Positions 1 to 40,523 of a stretch of 64,000 nt of DNA are shown here, piece by piece. The stretch covers positions 124,001 through 188,000 of the IMG/VR virus record IMGVR_UViG_3300046005_000547; one strand, given 5' to 3'. Made by a program: the position numbers and the translations under genes. Positions within the stretch are counted from its first letter, which is position 1. Each line of letters begins with the position of its first letter. The notes under the pieces are model-generated. The model was given only the letters and a program-made list of their open reading frames with translations. It was not told the DNA's origin and did not search any database.

Positions 1-2025
1 CATTGGTGAAATACCATACACATCTTCATAAACATCATTTGCCAATAATGCGATTGCCGCAGGTACAGCAGTGGCAACTGAACCTAAACCAGATACGGCA
101 GCCAATCCTGCTCCAGCGATATCTCCTTTTACCAATCTACTGATACCTTCCCCAACACCTAATGCAGCACCAATCAATGGAATAGATTTACCCAACATCC
201 CGCCCATGGCAGCAGGTAATCTTTTGGCAATAGAGGTTCCAATCAATGCAGAAGCACTTCCTTTCAATTTATTTCCAACACCGCCCAATACTTTACCGCC
301 AACAGATTTAACTACTCCACCCATCTTACCAACAACTGTTGATTCCTTTACTCCATTAACAACATTAGACGCTAAATTTCCAATAGAAGAACCAGCAACC
401 ATGGCAGCAGTAGCTCCACCAATCGCCTTTACTCCAGTTGATAATGGTTTGAATTTACCTCCGATTTTGGAGGCAATATCTTTTGTTGATTTTCCAAAGG
501 ATTTAGCTTTGTTCTTTAATTTACCACCTTCTTTCTTAGCGTTACCACCAAACAACCCACCCAATAATGATGTATCGGATTCTTCTTTCTCATTGACCCC
601 AAATTTACCCATTTTCAACAATTTGAAAATTTCTGTTTGAACATTCAATTGATTTTGTAATACATCAAATGTTTTGGATTTCTGTAAATTATCTTCAATT
701 TGAGATTCGGAAACTTCATTCGATATATTAGTTGATTCTTTAGAGGTTTCTTTAATTGAATCAGATAACGATTTGATTTCATCTTGTGTATTGGAAACGA
801 CAGTTGTTATCTTAGAGGACTCTTTAATTGAATCAGATAACGATTTGATTTCATCTTGTGTATTGGAAACGACAGTTGTTATCTTAGAGGTTTCTTTAAT
901 TGAATCAGATAATGATTTATTTTCATCTTGAACTTTAGATTCAACAGTTGTTATCTTAGAGGACTCTTTAATTGAATCAGATAATGATTTGATTTCATCT
1001 TGAACTTTAGATTCAACAGTTTCCTTTTTAATTGGAGATTCAACTGGAGTCGATTGAGATGGAATATCTTTAACTGGCTCTTCTTTGACAAATGTTTTAT
1101 CCGTATCCTCTATCTGTTTTCTTAGAGAGGAAAGTTCTTCAGATAATGTTTTAAACACTTCATTGGATTCATCCGTTTTTGGTAAATCTTTAAATGTATT
1201 AAGTTTATCAAACAATTCATTGTATGATTGTTTCATATTCAATAACATTTTGGATTCTTTAATTAGATCTTTCTCAACATCAGAACGTTTTTTATCTTTC
1301 AATAATTCTGGATTTTGTTCTATTGCTTGTTGTGCATATTCTAAATGAGTTTCTTTTACATTTTGTGATTGTAATAATACATCTTTCAAACCAACAATGT
1401 CCGCAAGTTTCTGTATATTTTCATTGGACCCAAACGACAATCCTTTTGTACCAATTTGTTTTATCACAGAAGAGGTTTTGAATTCATTATATCTTGGATC
1501 TTCTTTTACATTATACTTTGGGTTGATTCGTTTAGCTTCTTTAATGTAATCTTTGAACGATTCTCTATTGGATAGATATTTTCCTAATTTTGAATCTTCT
1601 TTTACACCAATAACATTTGTTGCGAATTTCTTTAATGAAGAAAGATTACCAATTGCTGATTTTTTAAACAATGATGAGATTACATTATCCGATTTATCAA
1701 CATCATATTTACCAGAAGGTTTATTTGTTGGTTGTTCTTTTGGTTTTGATTCTGGTGCGTTATCTTTCAAAACGGGTTTCGATTCAATTCTATCTTTAAT
1801 CTCAGATAACAAATCTATCATCTTCATGGAATTGTTGAATTGTTTCTCTTCCGCGAACCTTTCTTCAAATTGAATTTCTTTATCGGATTTACCGCCTGAA
1901 AATCTATTTGTTTCGTTTAATGAGATTTCTATATATTGTATCGCATCGGCAATAGTCGTTGTGTTATCATCTAATGACGATAAATGTTGTAATTGTTTCT
2001 TTAGTATGGAATCGATACTAGACAT
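1..2025 (-). CDS. Baseplate hub / tape-measure-like protein (T4 gp29-like), 3' end outside window
   Basis: Minus frame starts MSSIDSILKKQLQHL at 2025, overlapping the gp51 stop; coiled-coil then Gly/Ala-rich composition; position after gp26-gp51. Absent from ORF track because it runs off the edge. Confidence 0.65.
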   Translation of the reverse strand, partial: MSSIDSILKKQLQHLSSLDDNTTTIADAIQYIEISLNETNRFSGGKSDKEIQFEERFAEEKQFNNSMKMIDLLSEIKDRIESKPVLKDNAPESKPKEQPTNKPSGKYDVDKSDNVISSLFKKSAIGNLSSLKKFATNVIGVKEDSKLGKYLSNRESFKDYIKEAKRINPKYNVKEDPRYNEFKTSSVIKQIGTKGLSFGSNENIQKLADIVGLKDVLLQSQNVKETHLEYAQQAIEQNPELLKDKKRSDVEKDLIKESKMLLNMKQSYNELFDKLNTFKDLPKTDESNEVFKTLSEELSSLRKQIEDTDKTFVKEEPVKDIPSQSTPVESPIKKETVESKVQDEIKSLSDSIKESSKITTVESKVQDENKSLSDSIKETSKITTVVSNTQDEIKSLSDSIKESSKITTVVSNTQDEIKSLSDSIKETSKESTNISNEVSESQIEDNLQKSKTFDVLQNQLNVQTEIFKLLKMGKFGVNEKEESDTSLLGGLFGGNAKKEGGKLKNKAKSFGKSTKDIASKIGGKFKPLSTGVKAIGGATAAMVAGSSIGNLASNVVNGVKESTVVGKMGGVVKSVGGKVLGGVGNKLKGSASALIGTSIAKRLPAAMGGMLGKSIPLIGAALGVGEGISRLVKGDIAGAGLAAVSGLGSVATAVPAAIALLANDVYEDVYGISPM
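749..1022. repeat. 72-bp (24-codon) tandem repeat, ~4 copies, inside the gp29-like gene
   Basis: TCTTTAATTGAATCAGATAA recurs at 749, 821, 893, 965. Confidence 0.95.
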
Positions 2026-15732: not shown

Positions 15733-16083
15733 TCACCATTCAACAATAATTCTAATGCCATCATCTTCCTTCTTAGAGGAAACCTTATACCCTAATTCAA
15801 TCAATTTATCTAAAGATCGTTTTTGATAACAATAAGAACCTTTATAGAAGTATTTGAATGAACATTTGAACTCACCTTTAGCTGCTTTCTTTTTGATTTG
15901 GAATAACCAATTATCAACAAACATTTGTAATTTGTTCTGTTGACGTTTAGAGATCCAATGAGCCCGTTTTGCTGTAAATATAGAATCCCAAGGTTCATTA
16001 TCGCAATAATCGAATCCTGGATCTATAATTTCATTTGTGTCTTCAAACATTCCTGAATCTTTAATACCTTTTAAACTATACAT
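15733..16083 (-). CDS. Hypothetical protein
   Basis: AGGAG RBS; first gene downstream of repeat-array promoter 1. Confidence 0.7.
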   Translation of the reverse strand: MYSLKGIKDSGMFEDTNEIIDPGFDYCDNEPWDSIFTAKRAHWISKRQQNKLQMFVDNWLFQIKKKAAKGEFKCSFKYFYKGSYCYQKRSLDKLIELGYKVSSKKEDDGIRIIVEW

Positions 16084-16139
16084 TTGCTTTCTCCTAAGTT
16101 GAAATTATTATATGTTAAATTGATAAAATATAAAAGTCG

Positions 16140-17820
16140 AGGAAGATACTATAAGAATATTAAAAACCATTAATAACTCTAGCTGAAACATCGACATAGT
16201 CTAGTATACGCTTGTTTTATCGATTTCGAAAGGAGTTTCTCGATGATTGTAATTTACACATTCGATTAACATTTCATCTTAAAGGCTCTTTCGATACATG
16301 GTATCTATTGATTCGATGTTATCGTTTAATTTAACAGTCCATATTGTTGATTTAAGATGGATTGATTATATCTTGTAGAGTTGATTGACATAATACAGGA
16401 AGATTCCACTAGGATGGATTATTGGACAAATAATGGATGTTAACAATTCAACATAGAACTATTATAATGTAAATTCCAAACAATAAAAATCCCGAAAGAA
16501 CTTTTGATTCAATCGGGATCTGAATGGCAGAGATTTTATGTTGAATAATTGATTAAATTAATACTCGATAAAGACATATTATTGTTCTTGTAGTAATATA
16601 AAAGACATTAAAGAATACTAAAACGTATTAATAGAACTAACTCAAACCGTCGACATAGTCTAGTATACGCTCGTTTTATCGAAAAGTCAAGAGAAAACTT
16701 TAACTTGTAATAATCATATTCGATGTCTAAGATTATCTTTCGATACGTTTAAGACTCTTTCGATGTTTGATTATAGTTGATTCGATACCCTCACTTAATT
16801 TAACATGGAAATTTGTTGATTTAAGATGGATTGGTTATATCCTGTAGAGTTGAATGATGTATATTGGAAAGATTCCACTAGGATGGATTATTGGACAAAT
16901 AACGGTTGTTATGTGAATGATTTGGAATAGGTATATTGTAAATTTTAAACAATAAAAATCCCACTCAGAATAAATCTGGTGGGATCTGATACGCAGAGAT
17001 TTTAATGTTGAATTATTGTATAGAATATACTCGATAAAGAGTCTTGTAGTAATATAGAAGAACACTTAATGAAAGTAAAGGTAATAACTGAAACGTCGAC
17101 ATAGTCTACTATACTACATTTTCTAGGATTTCGAAAGGAGTATTCTTATCCTGTAATAATCATATTCGATATGTCGTACATCGAAAGGATTATCTTAAGA
17201 TGTCCTCGATACATGATGATTACAGTTTCGATGTTCTTGTTTAATATAGACATCCATATTTGGATTTTAAGATGGATTGATTATATGACATAGAGTTGAT
17301 TGGTATATATTGTTTAAACTCCATTAGGATGGAATAACGAGCAAATAATGATTGTTATCAAACCAATATGGAATTGATATATTGTAAATTGAATCCAATA
17401 AAAATCCTGATGGAGTGGTTGGTTCTCATCAGGATTTGGAAGTAGAGATTTTAATGTTGAATTATAGTAATATAATAATGTCGATAAAGAATCTTGTAGT
17501 AATATAGAAGACATTAAAGAATATAAAAATGACCTTAAAGGCAATAACTGAAACGTCGACATAGTCTAGTATACCCGAGTTTCTAACATTTCGAAAGGAG
17601 TAATTAGACTCTGTAATAATCATATTCGATACCATATACATCGAAATACTATCTTAAGATGTCCTCGATACATGATTATAATTGATTCGATGTTAACATT
17701 AAATCCTGTCCAGAAATTTGCCAATATAAGATGGATTCAATATATCCTGTAGAGTTTCTTGTTTATTATACAAAGATTCCATTAACATGGAGTATTAACC
17801 AAACAATGACGATATTATAC
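16140..17820. repeat. Tandem array of four ~455-bp degenerate non-coding units (cluster 1)
   Basis: TCGACATAGTCTA at 16191, 16650, 17096, 17556; AAGATGGATT-N10-TGTAGAGTT block in each; hairpins at ~16485, ~16954, ~17400. Confidence 0.95.
16662..16690 (-). promoter_or_regulatory. sigma70-type promoter TTGACT-N17-TATACT inside repeat unit 2
   Basis: Near-consensus; other units have TTTCGA-N17-TATACT/TATAGT/TATGCT at the same place. Confidence 0.75.
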
Positions 17821-17829
17821 AATGGATAC

Positions 17830-17837
17830 TATAAATA
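17830..17837 (+). promoter_or_regulatory. T4-type late promoter TATAAATA
   Basis: Exact consensus upstream of GAGGAG RBS of 17862. Confidence 0.8.
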
Positions 17838-17861
17838 AATTAAAATTAGAGGAGAAAAATA

Positions 17862-18827
17862 ATGTGCGTTATTGCTTGTAAGTATTTGACTGGTATCGGA
17901 TGGGTTGGTGTAAAGGATAGAGATAGAAATTACAAACCAGTGATTTCCATTATCCAAGACGCAAGAGAAGGTGTTGAATCTATCTTCATAAAAGATTCTG
18001 TCACCAAATACTCTGAAGGTATAAATGAATTCGGTGTTGGTATTTTGAATGCAGCCACTTCCGTTAGAAACGATGAAAGTGCAGCAGCAGCCGCAAGAAG
18101 ATATGAGAGAGAACGTAAGAAATCCAAAGGAACTTACATTGAACCAGATGGCATTAAAATTAGACATGCATTAAGATTCAAAACTCCGAAGGAATCTGCT
18201 GAGTATTTGGCATCTGTTGAATTGAGAGGTCACACTTTGGTATTCAACAAAGAAGAATGTTATATCTTAGAGGGAACTGATAAGAAATTGGATTTTGATT
18301 ATAATAAAAAGATGGCAGCGGAGAACCCAGACCATGAATGGGAACCGATGGAATATGAATTTGTAATTAAAAAAATTCAAAAAGATAGATTTGTTGTAAG
18401 AACAAATCACGGCAATTTCCTACCATGGTCTGGATACCAAAAAGACTCTGATGATTCAAAACAAATGTTTTCTAGAATGTCTTCTGAAACCAGACATAAC
18501 ACAGTCATCAAGAATTTACAAAATGTTGATTCCATCGAAGGTATGTTAGATGCGATTTCGGATACATCTAATGAAGATAAACAATTGAATCCAGTTAGAA
18601 CAGGCGATTATCAAGATAGAACTAAATTGAAAACAACCGGTCAATTATGTTTAATACCAGATAAATGTACGTTGATTTACAGACCTATCTGGTGTGAAAT
18701 GGATTTATCTTATGTTGATAAAATCAATTCATTAACAACTAAAACATTCTTTGAATTGAAACCTTTTAGATTAACTGAAAACATCATGATGTCTTTCAAA
18801 GATTACCAATTCAATTACAATTTGTAA
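17862..18827 (+). CDS. Ntn-hydrolase-like protein (N-terminal Cys; NRDE/C45-like)
   Basis: MCVIAC..VKDRDR..EGINEFGVGILN..RTNHG. Confidence 0.65.
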   Translation: MCVIACKYLTGIGWVGVKDRDRNYKPVISIIQDAREGVESIFIKDSVTKYSEGINEFGVGILNAATSVRNDESAAAAARRYERERKKSKGTYIEPDGIKIRHALRFKTPKESAEYLASVELRGHTLVFNKEECYILEGTDKKLDFDYNKKMAAENPDHEWEPMEYEFVIKKIQKDRFVVRTNHGNFLPWSGYQKDSDDSKQMFSRMSSETRHNTVIKNLQNVDSIEGMLDAISDTSNEDKQLNPVRTGDYQDRTKLKTTGQLCLIPDKCTLIYRPIWCEMDLSYVDKINSLTTKTFFELKPFRLTENIMMSFKDYQFNYNL

Positions 18828-18876: not shown

Positions 18877-19178
18877 TATTTCAATAAAATGTTGAGAAAT
18901 CCATCCTCAAGTATATTTGGTTGGTAAATCAGTTCCTTTGTTTTCATCCAATTATCGAATTCCTTGATATCAAATTTGGATAATTCATTTTTATGGATAT
19001 CTGTCTTTATAATAACAAATGTTGTTTCCTTATTGTAACTGATACGAAAGGAAACAACTCGCATTATACAATTTTCTATTACATTTAAGATATGTTCGTT
19101 ATTTGGCATATATTTGGATTTTAAGATGGATTCAGGATATCCTGTAGAGTTGATTGACATATAACGTAAAGATTCCAA
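18876..19178 (-). CDS. Hypothetical protein (5' part overlaps a repeat fragment; start uncertain)
   Basis: 100-aa ORF ending at terminator. Confidence 0.4.
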   Translation of the reverse strand: MESLRYMSINSTGYPESILKSKYMPNNEHILNVIENCIMRVVSFRISYNKETTFVIIKTDIHKNELSKFDIKEFDNWMKTKELIYQPNILEDGFLNILLK

Positions 19179-19192
19179 TATGGTTGATTAAT
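19108..19192. repeat. Isolated partial copy of the repeat-unit core block
   Basis: CATATTTGGATTTTAAGATGGATT-N10-TGTAGAGTTGATTGACATA..AAGATTCCA. Confidence 0.85.
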
Positions 19193-19237
19193 GTTCAAAT
19201 TACGATACATTAACGAATCTGTAATTTTGTATAACAA

Positions 19238-19245
19238 TATAAATA
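19238..19245 (+). promoter_or_regulatory. Late promoter TATAAATA
   Basis: Exact consensus upstream of 19276. Confidence 0.75.
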
Positions 19246-19275
19246 ATTCTATACAATAACGAAAGGAAACAATAG

Positions 19276-20918: not shown

Positions 20919-20956
20919 AAAATCCCATCAGACTTTTACATCTAATGGGATTCTTT
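20919..20956. terminator. Bidirectional intrinsic terminator
   Basis: AATCCCATCAGA..TCTAATGGGATT, near copy of 12383. Confidence 0.8.
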
Positions 20957-22011
20957 TATTTCATTTTCAACAATAATTGTTCATATACATTTGTAGCAAC
21001 GTTTGCCATCATAACAGGAGGTACAGACATACCACAAGCATAATCTGGTTTTACCTTACCAAAATTGAAATCCAATGGAAACGAACTAGCCAATATGAAT
21101 TCTTTATCAGTCATTGTTCTTGGAATAAAATGATGATAACAAGATTTACCAGAAGTCAATGTATTACAAGGTTTATCTGGGTGTAATTTCTTATATGAAA
21201 AGAAATTACCATTCGATAATTCTGATTTATCAAATCCAGATCCAGGTTCCACTGATGGATATATATCACGAATCGAAGGTGGTAATTCTTTATCTGGAAA
21301 TACATCATCTTCAGATATATCTTTAAATGGAATAATCGGTTCATTAAATTCCATTTGTATTCTTGGTAATAATTCTAATCCTTTATATTCCAAGAATTGT
21401 TCGCCTAGATCCTTCCTCACACAAATAAAGAACACCCGTTCCCTTTTTTGCGGTAATCCCATCTTAGAACCATCTAATAAGAAATGTTGACAGTAATATC
21501 CAGCTTCATCAAATTCCTTGTATATTCTATCAACATATTTCATTGCCTTACCGAGAATCAACCCTTTGACATTTTCTGCCACGACAATCTTCGGTTGAAG
21601 TTTCTTTGCCAAATCAATGAAATCAAAGAACAATGTATCCAAGACTTGTTTTGCTTGACCTTCCGAGAAGACTTTTTCCTTACCCCAATCTTTATCTCTA
21701 TTACCATTCATGGAAAAAGAAGAGCAGGGTGGACTACCATCAAGGATATCCAAGTTGTATAATTCTTCAGGAATATCATCTCTCTTGACGAATTCCCGTA
21801 TATCCTGAATGAAGGAATACTTTGGATTATGATTCAGATTGTAAATTTCATTCATTCTTGGATCTATCTCAACGCAACCTAAGACATTACCTCCAGCTAG
21901 TTTATATCCCATTGTAGAACCACCACAACAAGCGAAACAACTGAATACGGTAAATTTATCTTTGGTGAATGTCGTTTCCGATAAATTCCATTCATATGGG
22001 AATTTATGCAT
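20956..22011 (-). CDS. DNA (cytosine-5) methyltransferase
   Basis: FACCGG (motif I), GSPPC (IV), ENV (VI), QKRERVF (VIII), GMSVPP (X). Confidence 0.93.
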   Translation of the reverse strand: MHKFPYEWNLSETTFTKDKFTVFSCFACCGGSTMGYKLAGGNVLGCVEIDPRMNEIYNLNHNPKYSFIQDIREFVKRDDIPEELYNLDILDGSPPCSSFSMNGNRDKDWGKEKVFSEGQAKQVLDTLFFDFIDLAKKLQPKIVVAENVKGLILGKAMKYVDRIYKEFDEAGYYCQHFLLDGSKMGLPQKRERVFFICVRKDLGEQFLEYKGLELLPRIQMEFNEPIIPFKDISEDDVFPDKELPPSIRDIYPSVEPGSGFDKSELSNGNFFSYKKLHPDKPCNTLTSGKSCYHHFIPRTMTDKEFILASSFPLDFNFGKVKPDYACGMSVPPVMMANVATNVYEQLLLKMK

Positions 22012-34341: not shown

Positions 34342-35463
34342 ATGACCAGCAATAATATCTATATCGATAAAATAATCGAATTATGTTCAGATAATGAACA
34401 AACAGCAGAGTATATCTCCATCGTATCCAATGCTCGAATTCGATCATCTAATAAAAAAGAAGCAAAGGTGATTTTGGGATACACCGAAGAACACCATATA
34501 TTACCCAAATCGTTTAAGATGGGTGGAGAAACAGATAAATTAAATTACGCTTATCTATCTGCAAGAGAACATTATCGCGTCCATCAATTGTTAATAGAAA
34601 TGGGATTGAAACGTAATTTACACGAGAAGATGATTCATGCGTTTTGGTTGTTAAGTGTGTTGGACAAACACAAGTCCATATCCGAAGAAGAATATCAAGA
34701 GTTGAAGATTTTAAGAAGCAAATATCATAATTGGAAAGATCCCGAATGTATTCAAAAATGTAGAGATACGTATTTCGAGAAAACTGGATTCACCCATAAT
34801 ATGAAAGATCCAGAATGTAAAGAAAAAAGTAGAGATACACATTTTGAGAAAACTGGATATACTCATTATATGAAAGATCCCGAATGTATCCAAAAGTGTA
34901 AAGATACTCTTTTTGAAAGAACTGGATACACACATCATATGAAAGATCCAGAATGTATCCAAAAGGGTAAAGATACCAATTTTGAGAAAACTGGATACGA
35001 CAATCCTATGAAAAATCCAGAATGTAAAGAAAAGAATAAACGAGCCTTGGAAATAAAATATGCTAGACCATTAGTCTTACAGATTCTACAAGACGTAGAA
35101 AAATATAATATTATTAATCCAAGAAAAATTATGGGAATCAATGACCCTAATTGGAGACACGTCGATGATGAAAAACTGGAAGAAGGATCTATCAAGTTCT
35201 ATAAACATTTAGATGAACGTAAAATCAAGATAAAGGAATACGAATGTAGGATAAACGAGATTAGTTCCACATTTAAATCAATAGATGATAAACGATCCTT
35301 GATTTCATATATCAAAGAAATCAAGGATTTTTATAATATAACAAATTATACTGGTATAATGGAAGTGGATAGAAAGTGGAAAAGGGGTTTAAATGTGCTA
35401 GAATTACAAATTGCATTAGAAAAATTATTGAAACATACCGTTGATAAATTCTATATGAATTAG
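34342..35463 (+). CDS. Free-standing HNH-type homing endonuclease with 23-aa repeats
   Basis: YTEEHHILPKS..GG..N..LSAREHYRVHQLL; ACTAAATA late promoter and hairpin leader. Confidence 0.85.
   Translation: MTSNNIYIDKIIELCSDNEQTAEYISIVSNARIRSSNKKEAKVILGYTEEHHILPKSFKMGGETDKLNYAYLSAREHYRVHQLLIEMGLKRNLHEKMIHAFWLLSVLDKHKSISEEEYQELKILRSKYHNWKDPECIQKCRDTYFEKTGFTHNMKDPECKEKSRDTHFEKTGYTHYMKDPECIQKCKDTLFERTGYTHHMKDPECIQKGKDTNFEKTGYDNPMKNPECKEKNKRALEIKYARPLVLQILQDVEKYNIINPRKIMGINDPNWRHVDDEKLEEGSIKFYKHLDERKIKIKEYECRINEISSTFKSIDDKRSLISYIKEIKDFYNITNYTGIMEVDRKWKRGLNVLELQIALEKLLKHTVDKFYMN
34735..35035 (+). repeat. 69-bp coding repeat, ~4.4 copies (KDPECxxKxxDTxFEKTGYTHxM)
   Basis: Unit starts at 34735, 34804, 34873, 34942, 35011. 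Confidence 0.92.
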
Positions 35464-36950: not shown

Positions 36951-36979
36951 TTGACTTTTTAATTAAAATAGTTTATACT
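36951..36979 (+). promoter_or_regulatory. sigma70-type promoter TTGACT-N17-TATACT
   Basis: Near-consensus, pointing into a long region with no credible plus-strand ORF. Confidence 0.8.
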
Positions 36980-36985
36980 AGATAA

Positions 36986-37620
36986 GAACCAAAACTTTTA
37001 ACTAAATAAGATTGAACAATTAAAAACTTTGAAACGCACGAAACTCCATATAAAACGAACAAAAATATAAATAAATTTAAAAAATATAAAATTGAATACG
37101 TAGAAACATCATAAAGTAAAAATCTAGTTCCAAAGCTGAATAGAAGTCCAACGAAAGAGGTCCGTCGAATAGTTGGCACACATTGAAAGGTTCCTCCCAA
37201 ATAATTGTAAACAATTAGATAACTATTGACTTATAGGTAAGTATAGCGATGTCTACGGGGTATGCAAACGTCAAATTGTGTGATAAAAGTCTTTATTTTT
37301 AAAGACAGGATGTGGGTGACTATAAGTTTGACCACACCATTGTTGAAGTCGCTAGAATTGGCTCAACAATGCCCCGTTTGAATCGCGAGATTGTAGACAG
37401 TCGTAAAAGGAAACCGGCAAACCCTCCTTACTTTTTCAGAAGTTGACTAATTCTAGAGTGCCTTTCGGAAGAAGCACACTTTACTCTGGTAGGGTAAGAA
37501 GTGCCTTTCGGGTTGCACTCGATGCAACATCTATATACAAAAAGCGACAGATAATCTGCGTAAGCGCAGCGTCGTAGATTATTAAACGAGCGAAGCGAGT
37601 TTATGGCTTTTGCTTTTTAC
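36986..37620 (+). ncRNA. Candidate large structured non-coding RNA (family unassigned)
   Basis: Promoter, locally raised GC, many nested stems, several loop-to-distal complementarities, U-rich end. Confidence 0.7.
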
Positions 37621-37859
37621 TAATACTCTTCCTCGATCTTCTCCGACCTCATCCGAAATTCATTAGAATCATCTTATGTTAAATGTATCGATAAAGACAT
37701 CTTAAAATCAATATACAGATTAATCTTTAAATGACACTTAACAAAAATCAAAAGCAATGGTTTAGATGAACAAAAAAATGTTCATCTAAACTGCTTCGCA
37801 AGGTTTCTGTTAACATTATTATATTAAGATGACCTTTAAATGGAGAATAGAATATACAT

Positions 37860-39275
37860 TAAAGATATTCTATATCAAATAAAAATCCCACTCAGAAATT
37901 TATCTGGTGGGATTTTAAGATTAATATACATTAGAATGATTCTAGTTAAATTTAACATTGATATTTGTTGTTTTAAGACAGATTCATTACATCCTGTAGA
38001 GTTTCTTGTCATATTATACAAAGATTCAATTAAGATGGATTATTGGACAAATAATGGATGTATTATAATACATTTAAAACATCCTATATGAATTTAAACA
38101 TATTAAATGAATCTCTATCGCATTCGATACATTAAATGTGTCTTAAGATGTTCTTGTTAAATTTAACATGGAAATTTGTTGATTTAAGATAGATTTATAA
38201 TATGACATAGAGTTGATTGACATATATTGTTGAAATTCCACTAGAGTGGATTATTGGACAAATTATGATGGAATTAAATGATGTTTAGAATCATATTAAA
38301 TGAAATTAATGATTTATATTATGTCTATAAAGACTCTTGAAGTAATATAATAAACTCTTAAAAACCATTAATAACTCTACCTGAAACATCGACATAGTCT
38401 AGTATACTGTCTTTTCTACCATTTCGAAAGGAGTATTCTTATACTGTAATATACAGACTCGATATCTAGTTTATCGAATGACATCTTAAGACTCTTTTCG
38501 ATACATGATTATTACTCATTCGATGTTAATGTTTAATTCTATACAGTTATTTGTTGATTTAAGGTGGATTCATTATAACCTGTAGAGTTGATTGATGTAT
38601 ATTGGAAAGATTCCATTAAGATGGATTAACGAACAAATAATGGATGTTATCAAAGTTGTATACAATTCATAATCTGTAAATTTAAAACAATAAAAATCCC
38701 ACTCAGAAATTCATCTGGTGGGATTTTAAATTATACTCGACTCCAATAAAATGTATATCGATAATCAGAAACATCTGATGAATCATAAAGATGCCCTCTT
38801 CCGATATACCCCATTACGATTCTATCGTCGAATAATCCATAATATTGATTCTTAAACATATTCATAATAGATCTATAGAGAATGATTACTATTATTTATT
38901 CTGTAGTAATATATTAATGTCTATAAAGAATCTAAGTTAAAAACTAATAACAATAGATACATTAACTGAAACGTCGACATAGTCTAGCATATCCGAGTTT
39001 CTGACATTTCGAAAGGAGTAATTAGACTCTGTAATAATCATATTCGATATGTCTTACATCGAAAGACTATCTTAAGATGTTCTCGATACATGATTACAGT
39101 TTCGATGTTATTGTTTATTATAGACATCCATATTTGGATTTTAAGATGGATTAGAATTATGATGTAGAGTTGATTGACATATTACAAGAAGATTCCATTA
39201 AAATGGATTATTGGACAAATAAAAGATGAATTAAGAATGGTTTGAAATGTTAATTCTGTAAATTTTATCCAATAA
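37860..39275. repeat. Second cluster of the same repeat (2 full + 2 partial units), same orientation
   Basis: TCGACATAGTCTA at 38389, 38974; core block at ~37974, ~38185, ~38560, ~39141; hairpins at 37881, 38693. Confidence 0.92.
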
Positions 39276-39309
39276 AAAGCCGAATGTCCTTTTCAAGACA
39301 TTCGGCTTC
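39276..39309. terminator. Terminator after recQ
   Basis: AAGCCGAATGTC..GACATTCGGCTT. Confidence 0.85.
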
Positions 39310-39311
39310 GA

Positions 39312-40523
39312 TTATCTACAATTGTCGCATTTACCACATTTCTTAAAATTAGGATGTTCATCGAAATACTTCAACAATGACACTCTTCTACATGTATATT
39401 GTTCAGCAAAACTAACCATGGCATCTAATTTATTATTTTCAATACGTTTTTGATCTGGATGGGAATTGGTTTCATTTATCCATCTTCTTAACATAGTAAC
39501 ATCTGATTGAGACCATAATAATAAAGAACTCGCACTTTGTGAACTCCTTCCACCCCTTCCCGAACTCTGATAATATTCTTCAATGGTTTTTGGTAATCCA
39601 ATGTTAATAACAAAATCGATATAAGGGTGGTCAATACCAACTCCAAATGATGCCAATGTAGCAACAATCACTTTATATTGACCGCCGATGAACTTACGTT
39701 GAATATCATTACGTTCTTCTGGTTTAAATCCAGCGTGATATGCAACTGAATTGATTCCATTATCTTGTAGATGTTGATTAATTTCTTCCGTGGATTTTCG
39801 TGACATACAATAAACGATACCATTACTTTGTCTATGATTACGTTTGATGTAATCCAATGTTTGTTTCAATTCAGAACCTTTGGATTTAGTTTTCACTTCA
39901 TAATAGATATTTGGTCTATCAAAACTTGTTACAAATACTTTATCATTTTCCATTTTCAACGTTCTTAAGATATCTGCTTTTACAGCCGAATCCGCCGTTG
40001 CTGTCATTCCCAAAATGGGAACATCAGGGAAATGTTCAGGAATTACATGTAATTTCATATAATCTTCTCTGAATGAATGACCAAATTGTGAAATAGAATG
40101 AACTTCATCAATAGTGAACAATGAAATCTTTAATGTCTTAAGAAAATTGATTGTCCCTCGTTTATTGAGGCGTTCTGGTGAGATATACAATAAATCAATT
40201 TCATTATTTTGTAATGCATATTCAATACGTTCGATTTCATTTGATTTCAATGATGAATTTAAGAACTCTGCTCTGACTCCGCGTTTCTTAAGATTATCCA
40301 CTTGGTCTTGCATCAATGATATTAAAGGGGAAATAACAATACCAACTCCATCCATAACAATAGAGGGGATCTGGAAGCATAAACTTTTGCCAGCACCGGT
40401 TGGGAATAATACTAGAGCATTCTTACCAGATACGACGTGTTCAATGACTTCTCTTTGTAATTGTCTGAAATTCAAGTAACCAAAGTTTTCTTTTAGAGTA
40501 ACTAATAATGGATCTGTTGACAT
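39312..40523 (-). CDS. recQ: RecQ-family helicase (core + Zn domain; no WH/HRDC)
   Basis: PTGAGKSLCFQIP, SPLISLMQDQV, DEVH..GHSFR, TATA, YYQSSGRGGR, CRR..CGKCDNC. Confidence 0.95.
   Translation of the reverse strand: MSTDPLLVTLKENFGYLNFRQLQREVIEHVVSGKNALVLFPTGAGKSLCFQIPSIVMDGVGIVISPLISLMQDQVDNLKKRGVRAEFLNSSLKSNEIERIEYALQNNEIDLLYISPERLNKRGTINFLKTLKISLFTIDEVHSISQFGHSFREDYMKLHVIPEHFPDVPILGMTATADSAVKADILRTLKMENDKVFVTSFDRPNIYYEVKTKSKGSELKQTLDYIKRNHRQSNGIVYCMSRKSTEEINQHLQDNGINSVAYHAGFKPEERNDIQRKFIGGQYKVIVATLASFGVGIDHPYIDFVINIGLPKTIEEYYQSSGRGGRSSQSASSLLLWSQSDVTMLRRWINETNSHPDQKRIENNKLDAMVSFAEQYTCRRVSLLKYFDEHPNFKKCGKCDNCR

What the first reader, a model, noticed from the sequence alone, without database searches (positions are those of the whole stretch)
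37860..39275. Second cluster of the same repeat, between the candidate ncRNA and recQ
Seen: same orientation, 20 kb away; two full units keep TTTCGA-N17-TATACT/TATGCT (38401-29, 38986-39014) and two extra core blocks lie at ~37974 and ~38185. Units look mosaic: unit 5 shares TAAAAACCATTAATAACTCTA with unit 1, and unit 6 shares CCGAGTTTCT..GGAGTAATTAGACTCTGTAATAATCATATTCGAT with unit 4. Its promoters converge on the candidate ncRNA. Inference: ongoing recombination/gene conversion between clusters, and ncRNA + repeats + RecQ may form one functional locus such as an origin.
Basis: partly seen in the sequence, partly recalled or inferred. Interest (0 to 1): 0.7.

Follow-up and report, generated by a model that had tools for sequence, protein, structure and literature searches.

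The report
Repeat arrays that shuffle phage modules
The repeat is real: it is one of seven evenly spaced arrays of ~460-bp promoter-plus-terminator units in a 235-kb T4-like lake phage, and in a related phage the genome blocks between the arrays are inverted and reordered, with every breakpoint inside an array.

Summary
Observation confirmed. Window 37,860-39,310 holds two full and two partial copies of a ~460-nt unit. The complete 234,735-bp genome, a T4-like myovirus from lake water, has 24 full units in seven arrays. Read on the window's minus strand, each unit is: promoter (TTTCGA or TTGACT, N17, TATAcT, then AGACTATGTCGA), ~165 nt of AT-rich, poorly conserved transcript, a hairpin + TTTTTATT terminator, then ~270 nt of conserved untranscribed DNA rich in TCGA boxes. 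The promoter belongs to a phage-wide class found upstream of 21 ordinary genes. Most cassettes are empty. Two carry cargo: an HNH endonuclease, and a 44-aa ORF in this cluster.

A 249-kb relative also has seven main arrays plus a small extra one. Its seven inter-array blocks are collinear with ours but inverted or reordered, and every breakpoint falls in an array. Units group by genome (concerted evolution) and are mosaic (PHI p<0.001).

The "ncRNA + repeats + RecQ locus" is not: the relative lacks the ncRNA and has a different block on that side. The closest known things are PeSL cassettes of T4-like phages and the repeat regions of Campylobacter group II phages, so this is a new variant of a known kind. 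A T4 oriF/oriG-like origin role is neither shown nor excluded.

The parts
39312..40523 (-). RecQ-family helicase gene (403 aa). Its operon runs into the array.
   Evidence: Pfam DEAD, Helicase_C and RecQ_Zn_bind. 86% aa identity to the copy in the relative G001.
39270..39307 (-). Terminator T1: hairpin GCCGAATGTC..GACATTCGGC followed by TTTTTATTGG. It ends the RecQ operon and is the first element of the array.
   Evidence: Sequence. Fold dG -19.0 with T-run.
39015..39269 (-). Conserved untranscribed terminator-to-promoter region of unit 6. It holds AATTTACA, CATCCATTATTTGTCCAATAATCCA, CAATCAACTCTA at 39176-39165, and ATCGAA/TCGAT boxes.
   Evidence: Alignment of 32 copies from two genomes. Regular spacing: terminator, 102 nt, CAATCAACTCT, 162-168 nt, promoter. 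No consensus RNA fold on either strand.
38974..39014 (-). Unit-6 promoter: TTTCGA (39014-39009), N17, TATGCT (38991-38986), then AGACTATGTCGA.
   Evidence: Same class as 21 gene-linked TTTCGA-N16-TATAAT-AGA promoters.
38731..38865 (-). Cargo of cassette 6: 44-aa ORF MNMFKNQYYGLFDDR... between the promoter and the next terminator.
   Evidence: 75% aa identity to an ORF in the RecQ-side array of G001. No Pfam hit.
38689..38729 (-). Terminator T2: CCCACCAGATGAATTTCTGAGTGGG followed by ATTTTTATTG.
   Evidence: family D16; dG -15.0.
38430..38688 (-). Conserved terminator-to-promoter region of unit 5 (CAATCAACTCTA at 38594-38583).
38389..38429 (-). Unit-5 promoter: TTTCGA (38429-38424), N17, TATACT (38406-38401), then AGACTATGTCGA.
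38158..38333 (-). Promoter-less partial copy of the terminator-to-promoter region, lying in the path of the unit-5 transcript.
   Evidence: D1, D2. nhmmer profile positions 216-396.
37947..38122 (-). Second promoter-less partial copy of the terminator-to-promoter region.
   Evidence: nhmmer profile positions 250-390.
37878..37918 (-). Terminator T3, a near-identical copy of T2. It closes the array on the ncRNA side.
   Evidence: D16, 98% identity. (dG -15.0).
37760..37791 (-). Extra 13-bp hairpin with a weak T tail on the minus strand, between the array and the candidate ncRNA.
36951..37625 (+). Neighbour, not part of the repeat: candidate ncRNA with its own TTGACT-N17-TATACT-AGA promoter (36951-36979).
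   Evidence: Fold z-score -3.1. A 308-nt metatranscriptome contig covers 37155-37462. No Rfam family. Absent from G001.
16104..17933 (-). Sister array in the window: four units, same orientation. Its last promoter leads into the minus-strand gene at 15733-16083.
19109..19259 (-). Solitary copy of the terminator-to-promoter region without a promoter core.

Best explanation
The cluster is one of seven arrays of self-contained, mostly empty transcription cassettes in a T4-like jumbo phage. On the window's minus strand, each ~460-bp unit has a promoter of the phage's own gene-promoter class: TTTCGA, or in a minority TTGACT, then N17, TATAcT and AGA. About 165 nt of AT-rich, non-coding, unstructured transcript follows, then an intrinsic terminator. 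About 270 bp of conserved, untranscribed DNA packed with TCGA-containing boxes follows, probably protein-binding. In five of the seven arrays the last promoter feeds the downstream operon. Two cassettes carry cargo genes. Because the units are homologous and lie in both orientations around the genome, the phage's homologous recombination system exchanges sequence among them. That produces concerted evolution and mosaic units. Now and then it crosses over between arrays, which inverts or moves the ~20-47-kb blocks between them. Shown: the anatomy, the promoter-class membership, the conserved terminator hairpins, the lack of a conserved ORF or RNA fold, concerted evolution, mosaicism, and breakpoints in arrays. 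Inferred: that the promoters fire, that the terminator-to-promoter region binds protein, and that homologous rather than site-specific recombination did the shuffling.
For: There are 24 cores in 7 arrays. The spacing is regular: promoter, ~200 nt, terminator, 102 nt, CAATCAACTCT, ~166 nt, next promoter. The T-run follows the hairpin only on the promoter's strand, and stems differ between units yet all fold at -11 to -19 kcal/mol. TTTCGA-N16-TATAAT-AGA occurs 21 times in each genome and 0 times in shuffles. In the window's genome, 15 of the 21 lie 53-105 nt upstream of the next co-oriented ORF. The ATG near +1 gives a 4-aa ORF in many units and in the G001 consensus. There is no consensus RNA structure apart from the terminator. 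Cargo: an HNH_3 endonuclease and a 44-aa ORF, both kept at the orthologous array flank in the relative. T4-like gene set including UvsY. Synteny: seven collinear blocks, ordered a, b(inverted), c, e(inv), f(inv), d(inv), g in the relative. All breakpoints fall in arrays, and array orientation relative to all 14 block ends is kept. Units form genome-specific clades with 100% support. PHI test p<0.001. Exact tracts reach 92 nt between arrays. No serine or tyrosine recombinase was found. Identical arrays appear in independent assemblies.
Against: There is no transcript evidence for the units. The only RNA contig lies on the neighbouring ncRNA. Nothing explains why multi-unit arrays are kept in all seven main places in both species. 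Nothing explains why they are so evenly spaced (CV 0.22, P=4e-4). Nothing explains why the ~270-bp untranscribed part is the best-conserved part. These points suggest a selected function beyond 'promoter plus recombination substrate'. No alternative genome isomers were seen within the population. Only two species-level genomes carry the unit.
Confidence: 0.6

Rival explanations
1. The arrays are replication origins of the T4 oriF/oriG type. A phage promoter fires into an AT-rich unwinding element, the RNA stays as an R-loop, and it primes leading-strand synthesis. Tandem copies and even spacing would give seven strong initiation zones. Recombination hot-spot behaviour would come with origin function.
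For: [quoted passage not shown] T4 has at least five such origins, several at points of divergent transcription (PMC3016281). Here the transcribed spacer has 21-23% GC against 28% for intergenic DNA, and it is the least conserved part. Arrays are evenly spaced. At least three sit at divergent transcription. The same -10 + AGACTATGTCGA core sits beside uvsY in about 40 smaller T4-like contigs, and uvsY is linked with oriF in the T4 replication literature (the map position is recalled, not read here).
Against: After allowing for gene orientation there is no fork-direction signal in GC or AT skew (68 and 100 of 234 rotations do as well). A strong terminator 200 nt downstream is not a feature of the T4 origins. 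The best-conserved part lies upstream of the promoter, not in the putative unwinding element. In the small phages the promoter points away from uvsY. No replication data exist.
Confidence: 0.18
2. Each unit is a gene for a trans-acting small RNA, and the arrays exist to raise its dosage.
For: Promoter and terminator bracket ~165-200 nt. The first ~25 nt of the transcript are conserved in both phages.
Against: The transcript body is the least conserved part and has no consensus fold beyond the terminator. No Rfam family matches. No RNA contig covers it. Cargo-bearing cassettes show that the space is used as a gene slot.
Confidence: 0.08
3. The arrays are binding platforms. They could titrate the factor that reads the TTTCGA box, or serve a genome-organising protein. 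On this view the transcription units are secondary.
For: In arrays TCGA is 5-fold, TTTCGA 10.5-fold and GTCGAC 46-fold enriched. The composite box TCGA(A/G)-N2-3-TGTAA occurs 20 of 24 times inside arrays. The untranscribed 270 bp is the best-conserved part. Spacing is even.
Against: No binding protein has been identified. No MotA or AsiA homologue was found, although that search had no positive control. Box positions show no clear periodicity.
Confidence: 0.1
4. One reading: the ncRNA, the repeats and RecQ form one functional locus.
For: They are adjacent in this genome. RecQ is still about 1 kb from an array in the relative.
Against: The ncRNA has no homologue in the relative. There its left-flank genes abut an array directly, and the array near RecQ borders a different block. 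Six other arrays have neither RecQ nor the ncRNA nearby.
Confidence: 0.03
5. A site-specific inversion system (shufflon or Gin/Hin-like) acts on the near-palindromic core.
For: The core TAGAC-TAT-GTCGA is a near-palindrome. Blocks are inverted exactly at arrays.
Against: The complete genome has no serine or tyrosine recombinase, and the controls were positive. Mosaicism spreads over the whole unit rather than sitting at one crossover site.
Confidence: 0.03

Closest known systems
PeSL cassettes (promoter-early stem-loop) of T4-like phages RB49/phi1, PST, nt-1 (PMC2839356, PMC4122927)
   Same: Repeated intergenic composites of a terminator hairpin and a sigma70-type phage promoter in T4-like myoviruses. 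They bracket small ORFan or homing-endonuclease cargo. They serve as patches for homologous recombination that reshuffles the genome. A few ordinary promoters of this phage even have the PeSL layout, with a hairpin and T-run 16 nt upstream of the -35.
   Different: Here terminator and promoter are separated by ~270 bp of conserved DNA. Units are ~460 bp and stand head to tail in arrays of 2-5, mostly without cargo. The arrays lie at seven evenly spaced points instead of filling hyperplastic regions. The outcome is inversion and transposition of 20-47-kb blocks that include core genes, not indels of single ORFans. Most promoters carry TTTCGA instead of a sigma70 -35.
Repeat regions RR1-RR4 of Campylobacter group II phages CP21, CP220, CPt10 (PMC4546147)
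   Same: These are T4-related myoviruses whose genomes are large modules separated by long arrays of similar repeat units. Modules are inverted between related phages. Unit number and orientation vary. Single units lie elsewhere in the genome, and some arrays enclose genes.
   Different: The Campylobacter units are 72-86 bp with a 13-bp core, up to 18 per arm, and there are four modules. The passages read describe no promoter or terminator anatomy. Here the units are 460 bp with defined promoter, terminator and upstream blocks, there are seven modules, and there is no sequence similarity to the Campylobacter units.
T4 replication origins oriF(uvsY) and oriG(34) (PMC3016281)
   Same: A phage-type promoter followed by an A+T-rich stretch whose sequence does not matter. 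Several per genome, some at divergent transcription.
   Different: T4 origins are single ~100-bp elements without terminators, arrays or a conserved upstream block. No replication evidence exists here, and skew is silent.

Membership tests
PeSL (promoter-early stem-loop) cassettes | Repeated intergenic motif in a T4-like phage that contains a sigma70-like early promoter | tested here: met
   T4-like gene set. 24 unit promoters, 5 with TTGACT-N17-TATAGT/TATACT and 19 with TTTCGA at the -35 place. Promoter activity itself was not tested.
PeSL (promoter-early stem-loop) cassettes | Stable stem-loop terminator adjacent to the promoter, forming one small composite | tested here: not met
   A hairpin + T-run is present in every full unit, but it lies ~270 bp upstream of the next promoter. 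Only 2-4 of the 21 ordinary promoters have the adjacent layout.
PeSL (promoter-early stem-loop) cassettes | Flank ORFan cargo, and recombination between copies reshuffles the genome | tested here: met
   HNH endonuclease and 44-aa ORF cargo. All rearrangement breakpoints against the relative fall in arrays. Mini-circles were not testable.
Campylobacter group II phage repeat regions | Long arrays of related units that separate large genome modules, with modules inverted between related phages | tested here: met
   Seven arrays and seven modules. Four modules are inverted and the order is changed in the relative.
Campylobacter group II phage repeat regions | Units of 72-86 bp that share the 13-bp core of that group | tested here: not met
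   Units here are ~460 bp with an 18-20-bp core, GTCGACATAGTCTAGTATAC. The unit-size difference alone fails this feature. The Campylobacter core sequence was not retrieved, so it was not compared directly.
T4 oriF/oriG-type origin | Phage-type promoter followed by an A+T-rich unwinding element | tested here: met
   A promoter of the phage's own class, then a spacer of 21-23% GC.
T4 oriF/oriG-type origin | Persistent R-loop and initiation of replication at the site | not testable with these tools
   Only indirect: skew regression shows no fork signal, and no usable depth data were obtained.
Known RNA family (Rfam) or structured small RNA | Match to a covariance model, or a conserved secondary structure with covariation | tested here: not met
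   No match reaches the gathering score, and the best sub-threshold hits are only terminator look-alikes. RNAalifold finds 0 pairs in the terminator-to-promoter region on both strands, and only the terminator in the transcript.
Site-specific inversion system (Gin/Hin, shufflon) | A serine or tyrosine recombinase encoded with the sites | tested here: not met
   PF00239 and PF00589 are absent from the complete genome, with positive controls ringing.

The most novel reading that the evidence does not exclude
The seven evenly spaced arrays are a selected genome-architecture device of this jumbo T4-like lineage. They would be multi-copy R-loop origins, or factor-loading zones, built from promoter + AT-rich cassettes. 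Their homology also lets the phage invert and permute whole 20-47-kb modules. On this reading replication initiation, recombination hot spots and module shuffling are one system, and the conserved 270-bp TCGA-box region is its protein-binding part.
Probability: 0.15. Interest if true: 0.8.

Novelty: new variant of a known kind. Interest (0 to 1): 0.5.

Why it matters
The finding shows, with breakpoint-level evidence, how a 235-kb virulent phage genome can be cut into seven blocks and reshuffled without a dedicated recombinase. It extends the PeSL idea from single-gene indels to inversion and relocation of core-gene modules. It gives the Campylobacter-phage 'repeat region' phenomenon a defined anatomy of promoter, terminator and conserved upstream block. 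It also defines a phage promoter class with an unusual -35 box (TTTCGA). The even spacing and the conserved untranscribed block are not explained by recombination alone. They make an origin or organiser role testable by standard 5'-end RNA mapping, long-read junction counting and marker-frequency analysis. Practically, these arrays break short-read assemblies and could cause mis-joined jumbo-phage genomes.

Tried and rejected
- **Known RNA genes.** tRNA/tmRNA and Rfam scans of the window and the locus gave nothing at gathering score.
- **Coding potential of the transcript.** Rejected. The ATG near +1 stops after 4 codons in many units and in the G001 consensus, and indels break the frame between units.
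- **Structured RNA in the conserved 270 nt.** Rejected on both strands.
- **A second promoter at AATTTACA just after the terminator (true PeSL layout).** Rejected: no -10 at a workable distance.
- **A forward-strand promoter (CTGAAA-N16-TATAC).** Rejected. It has a weak -35, and the terminators have no T-run on that strand.
- **The forward-strand AAAGGAG as a ribosome-binding site.** Rejected: no start codon follows. It is the complement of the TCC that precedes the -35 box.
- **Origin signal in GC/AT skew.** None.
- **Site-specific recombinase.** None. MotA and AsiA: none found, but that search had no positive control.
- **The core as a host regulon site.** Rejected. There are only 11 scattered hits in 185,579 species genomes.
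- **Alternative genome isomers.** The IMG/VR copies and the contigs carrying RecQ all show the same arrangement, or break at the array.
- **More relatives.** The upstream-block pattern occurs only in the two lineages in IMG/VR. The single JGI metagenome hit is unrelated.
- **DNA similarity to deposited phages.** None useful.
- **RNA reads.** The second showed RNA only over the neighbouring ncRNA.

Full report
**What the window is.** The window is bases 124,001-188,000 of a single 234,735-bp contig with direct terminal repeats, 31.5% GC, assembled from lake water. PHROG and Pfam hits show a T4-like myovirus: tail sheath, portal, gp6-like baseplate wedge, gp5-like hub/lysozyme, large terminase, topoisomerase II, DNA ligase, UvsY, ribonucleotide reductase and a RecQ-family helicase. 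By sheath protein, the nearest cultured phages are only 40-48% identical. They are T4-like phages of Alpha-, Beta- and Gammaproteobacteria: Sinorhizobium phiM12, Ochrobactrum vB_OspM_OC, Stenotrophomonas DLP_6, Pelagibacter Mosig and Methylophilales Melnitz.

**The observation.**
- The finding's region holds two full units. nhmmer matches them at genome 162,314-162,775 and 162,885-163,360.
- It also holds two promoter-less partial copies, at window 37947-38122 and 38158-38333.
- A scan of the whole genome for the core GTCGACATAGTCTAGTATAC finds 24 copies in seven arrays, near 42, 73, 105, 141, 162.5, 197 and 229 kb.
- Five arrays have one orientation and two the other. A few solitary partial copies lie elsewhere.
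- Identical arrays occur in independent assemblies from other samples, so they are not assembly artefacts.

**Anatomy and strand.** An alignment of all units and a motif-by-motif map give a very regular unit. For this cluster the transcription direction is the window's minus strand.
- A -35 box comes first: TTTCGA in 19 units, TTGACT in 5.
- Then come 17 nt, TATAcT (TATAGT in some units) and the invariant AGACTATGTCGA.
- About 200 nt after the -35 comes a hairpin of -11 to -19 kcal/mol followed by TTTTTATT.
- 102 nt further on is the motif CAATCAACTCT, and about 166 nt after that the next -35.
- The T-run follows the hairpin only on this strand. The stems differ in sequence from unit to unit yet always pair.

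**The promoter class.** The unit promoter is not peculiar to the repeat.
- TTTCGA-N16-TATAAT-AGA occurs 21 times in this genome and 21 times in the relative. Dinucleotide-preserving shuffles give none.
- In this genome, 15 of the 21 lie 53-105 nt upstream of the next co-oriented ORF.
- The unit promoters are therefore members of a genuine phage promoter class with an unusual -35 box.
- No MotA or AsiA homologue was found, but that search lacked a positive control.

**What the unit does not contain.**
- The ATG that falls at about +1 opens a 4-codon ORF in many units and in the relative's consensus. The longer ORFs in other units are not frame-conserved.
- RNAalifold finds no consensus pairs on either strand of the ~270-nt terminator-to-promoter region. 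In the transcribed part it finds only the terminator.
- There is no Rfam match.
- Between the two phages the transcribed spacer is the least conserved part and the most AT-rich: 21-23% GC, against 29-30% for the terminator-to-promoter region.
- The best-conserved parts are the promoter, the first ~25 transcribed nt, the terminator and several blocks of the terminator-to-promoter region.
- That region is dense in TCGA boxes. In the arrays TCGA is 5-fold, TTTCGA 10.5-fold and GTCGAC 46-fold enriched. The composite TCGA(A/G)-N2-3-TGTAA is almost confined to arrays.
- I read this region as protein-binding DNA. That is an inference.

**Cassettes and their context.** Most cassettes are empty, but two hold genes between promoter and terminator.
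- One is a 213-aa HNH_3 endonuclease, at genome 72,942.
- The other lies in the cluster under review: a 44-aa ORF at window 38865-38731. This is why unit 6 is 585 nt long rather than 460.
- Both are conserved in the relative at the orthologous array flank.
- In five of the seven arrays the last promoter leads into a co-oriented gene or operon, for example DNA ligase.
- In four arrays the other end abuts structural or other genes that carry T4-type NATAAATA late-promoter motifs, for example the tail sheath.
- In this cluster the RecQ operon ends in the array's first terminator (39270-39307). Two promoters then fire towards the candidate ncRNA and are stopped by the terminator at 37878-37918.

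**The relative and the rearrangements.** IMGVR_UViG_3300046008_000242 is 249,362 bp, 98% complete, and 65-87% identical in nucleotides over aligned blocks. It carries 24 cores in seven main arrays plus one small extra array. I fetched it whole.
- blastn shows that the seven inter-array blocks of our genome are each collinear with it.
- Their order there is a, b(inverted), c, e(inverted), f(inverted), d(inverted), g.
- Every breakpoint lies in an array.
- For all 14 block ends, the orientation of the adjoining array relative to the block is the same in both genomes.
- This is what crossing-over inside homologous arrays predicts: inversion between inverted arrays, and excision with reinsertion (or successive inversions) between direct ones.
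- The complete genome has no serine or tyrosine recombinase and it has UvsY, so homologous recombination is the likely agent. That is an inference.

**Concerted evolution and mosaicism.**
- In a maximum-likelihood tree all units of each genome form one clade with 100% support, rather than pairing by position.
- Mean identity is 65% both within and between arrays of one genome, and 55% between genomes. The aligned blocks between the arrays are 65-87% identical.
- A PHI test gives 0 of 1000 permutations as low as observed, in either genome. The nearest neighbour of each of the two units in the finding changes several times along its length.
- Exact tracts shared between arrays reach 92 nt, and 57 and 46 nt for the two units here. 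The PeSL paper, citing Singer 1982, says T4 recombination needs homology patches of under 50 bp.
- 'Ongoing' is not shown. All population samples that span an array have the same arrangement.

**The proposed ncRNA-repeat-RecQ locus.** This is not supported.
- In the relative, RecQ (86% aa identity) still lies beside an array, about 1 kb from it, but the far side of that array is block d.
- The genes to the left of our ncRNA abut a different array directly.
- The ~950-nt ncRNA region has no homologue there.
- The ncRNA candidate itself looks real. It has a TTGACT-N17-TATACT-AGA promoter, a fold z-score of -3.1, and a 308-nt metatranscriptome contig over 37155-37462. It is, however, an independent insertion next to the array.

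**Function.** What is shown is a promoter-terminator cassette array that acts as a recombination substrate. Three facts argue for an additional selected role.
- Multi-unit arrays are kept at all seven main sites in both species.
- Their spacing is much more even than chance: CV 0.22, P=4e-4. The two genomes are not independent samples for this test.
- The untranscribed 270 bp is the most conserved part.

The most interesting candidate is a T4 oriF/oriG-like origin. Those origins are a phage-type promoter plus an A+T-rich unwinding element of arbitrary sequence (PMC3016281), which is what promoter-plus-spacer looks like here. But skew analysis shows no fork signal, and T4 origins have neither terminators nor arrays. 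I give this reading about 0.18. Small-RNA genes and a factor-binding platform are lesser rivals.

**Comparison with known systems.** The closest are the following.
- PeSL cassettes of T4-like phages are repeated promoter + stem-loop composites that flank ORFans and mediate shuffling (PMC2839356, PMC4122927).
- The repeat regions of Campylobacter group II phages separate four modules that are inverted between CP21 and CP220 (PMC4546147).

This case shares the logic of both. It differs in unit size and anatomy, in being tandem and mostly empty, in its even spacing, in its unusual -35 box, and in moving core-gene modules. It fails the PeSL criterion of an adjacent promoter and stem-loop, and it fails the Campylobacter unit definition. 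I therefore class it as a new variant of a known kind, not as a member of either family.

**Limits.** My ORF calls are crude (ATG starts, at least 50 aa). Only two species-level genomes carry the unit. No transcription, binding or replication data exist for the units.

Noticed in passing
loci L002-L053 (e.g. L038:1181-1198); window 38389-38406 and 38974-38991: The 18-mer TCGACATAGTCTANTATA (the -10 plus AGACTATGTCGA) also occurs once each in about 40 IMG/VR contigs of 35-43% GC that lack the repeat unit. There it reads TTGAC(T/A)-N17-TATAAT-AGACTATGTCGA. In the contig examined (L038) it sits between a tail-tube/gp3-like gene and uvsY and points antisense into the tail gene; the alike flanks suggest the same place in many others. 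Two such contigs carry a betaproteobacterial-type tmRNA. The motif is at chance level in 185,579 species genomes.
   Followed up: partly
window 36951-37625 (+): Candidate ~600-nt ncRNA with a consensus-like promoter (TTGACT-N17-TATACT-AGA). Fold z-score is -3.1, with UUCG-capped hairpins. A 308-nt metatranscriptome contig (97% identical) covers 37155-37462. There is no Rfam family and no homologue in the 249-kb relative.
   Followed up: partly
whole genome; in the window e.g. 36394-36366 (-), 12363-12335 (-), 13367-13339 (-), 63750-63722 (-): A phage-wide promoter class, tC-TTTCGA-N16-TATAAT-AGA, occurs 21 times in each of the two genomes and 0 times in shuffles. Several are followed by a shared leader, AGATTTCAAGTTGGAAGAATCCAATGAACT, that has a small hairpin.
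   Followed up: partly
genome 42, 73, 105, 141, 162.5, 197 and 229 kb (window 16.1-17.9 kb and 37.9-39.3 kb): The seven arrays are far more evenly spaced than chance (intervals 22-48 kb, CV 0.22, P=4e-4). The relative shows the same (CV 0.25, P=1e-3). Both genomes hold exactly 24 cores.
   Followed up: partly
relative G001 135,850-136,950 (locus L060): The terminator after RecQ is duplicated (AAATTTCATCCAATC[G/A]AAAGCCGACTATCCTATTAAGATAGTCGGCTT) on both sides of a ~1-kb insert that our genome lacks. This looks like a cassette insertion between repeated terminators.
   Followed up: no
genome 46,842-49,727 (L069:6842-9727) and 74,002-75,981 (L070:14002-15981): The portal protein has an HNH-endonuclease-like stretch in its middle (aa 436-518). 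The large terminase matches its family in two separated parts. Both suggest inserted mobile elements (intein or homing endonuclease).
   Followed up: no
window 658-1089 and 34725-35069: In-frame-length tandem repeats of 72 nt (about 5 copies) and 69 nt (about 4.5 copies). The second lies inside the DUF7487 protein gene at 34342-35463.
   Followed up: no
window 20956-22011 (-): A C-5 cytosine DNA methylase gene. TCGA is at its expected frequency outside the arrays, so there is no sign that the phage avoids this site.
   Followed up: no
genome 73,890 (+) towards 74,002-75,981 (-): The last promoter of array 2 fires antisense into the 3' end of the large terminase gene. The small T4-like contigs show the same arrangement, with the promoter firing antisense into a late tail gene.
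   Followed up: no
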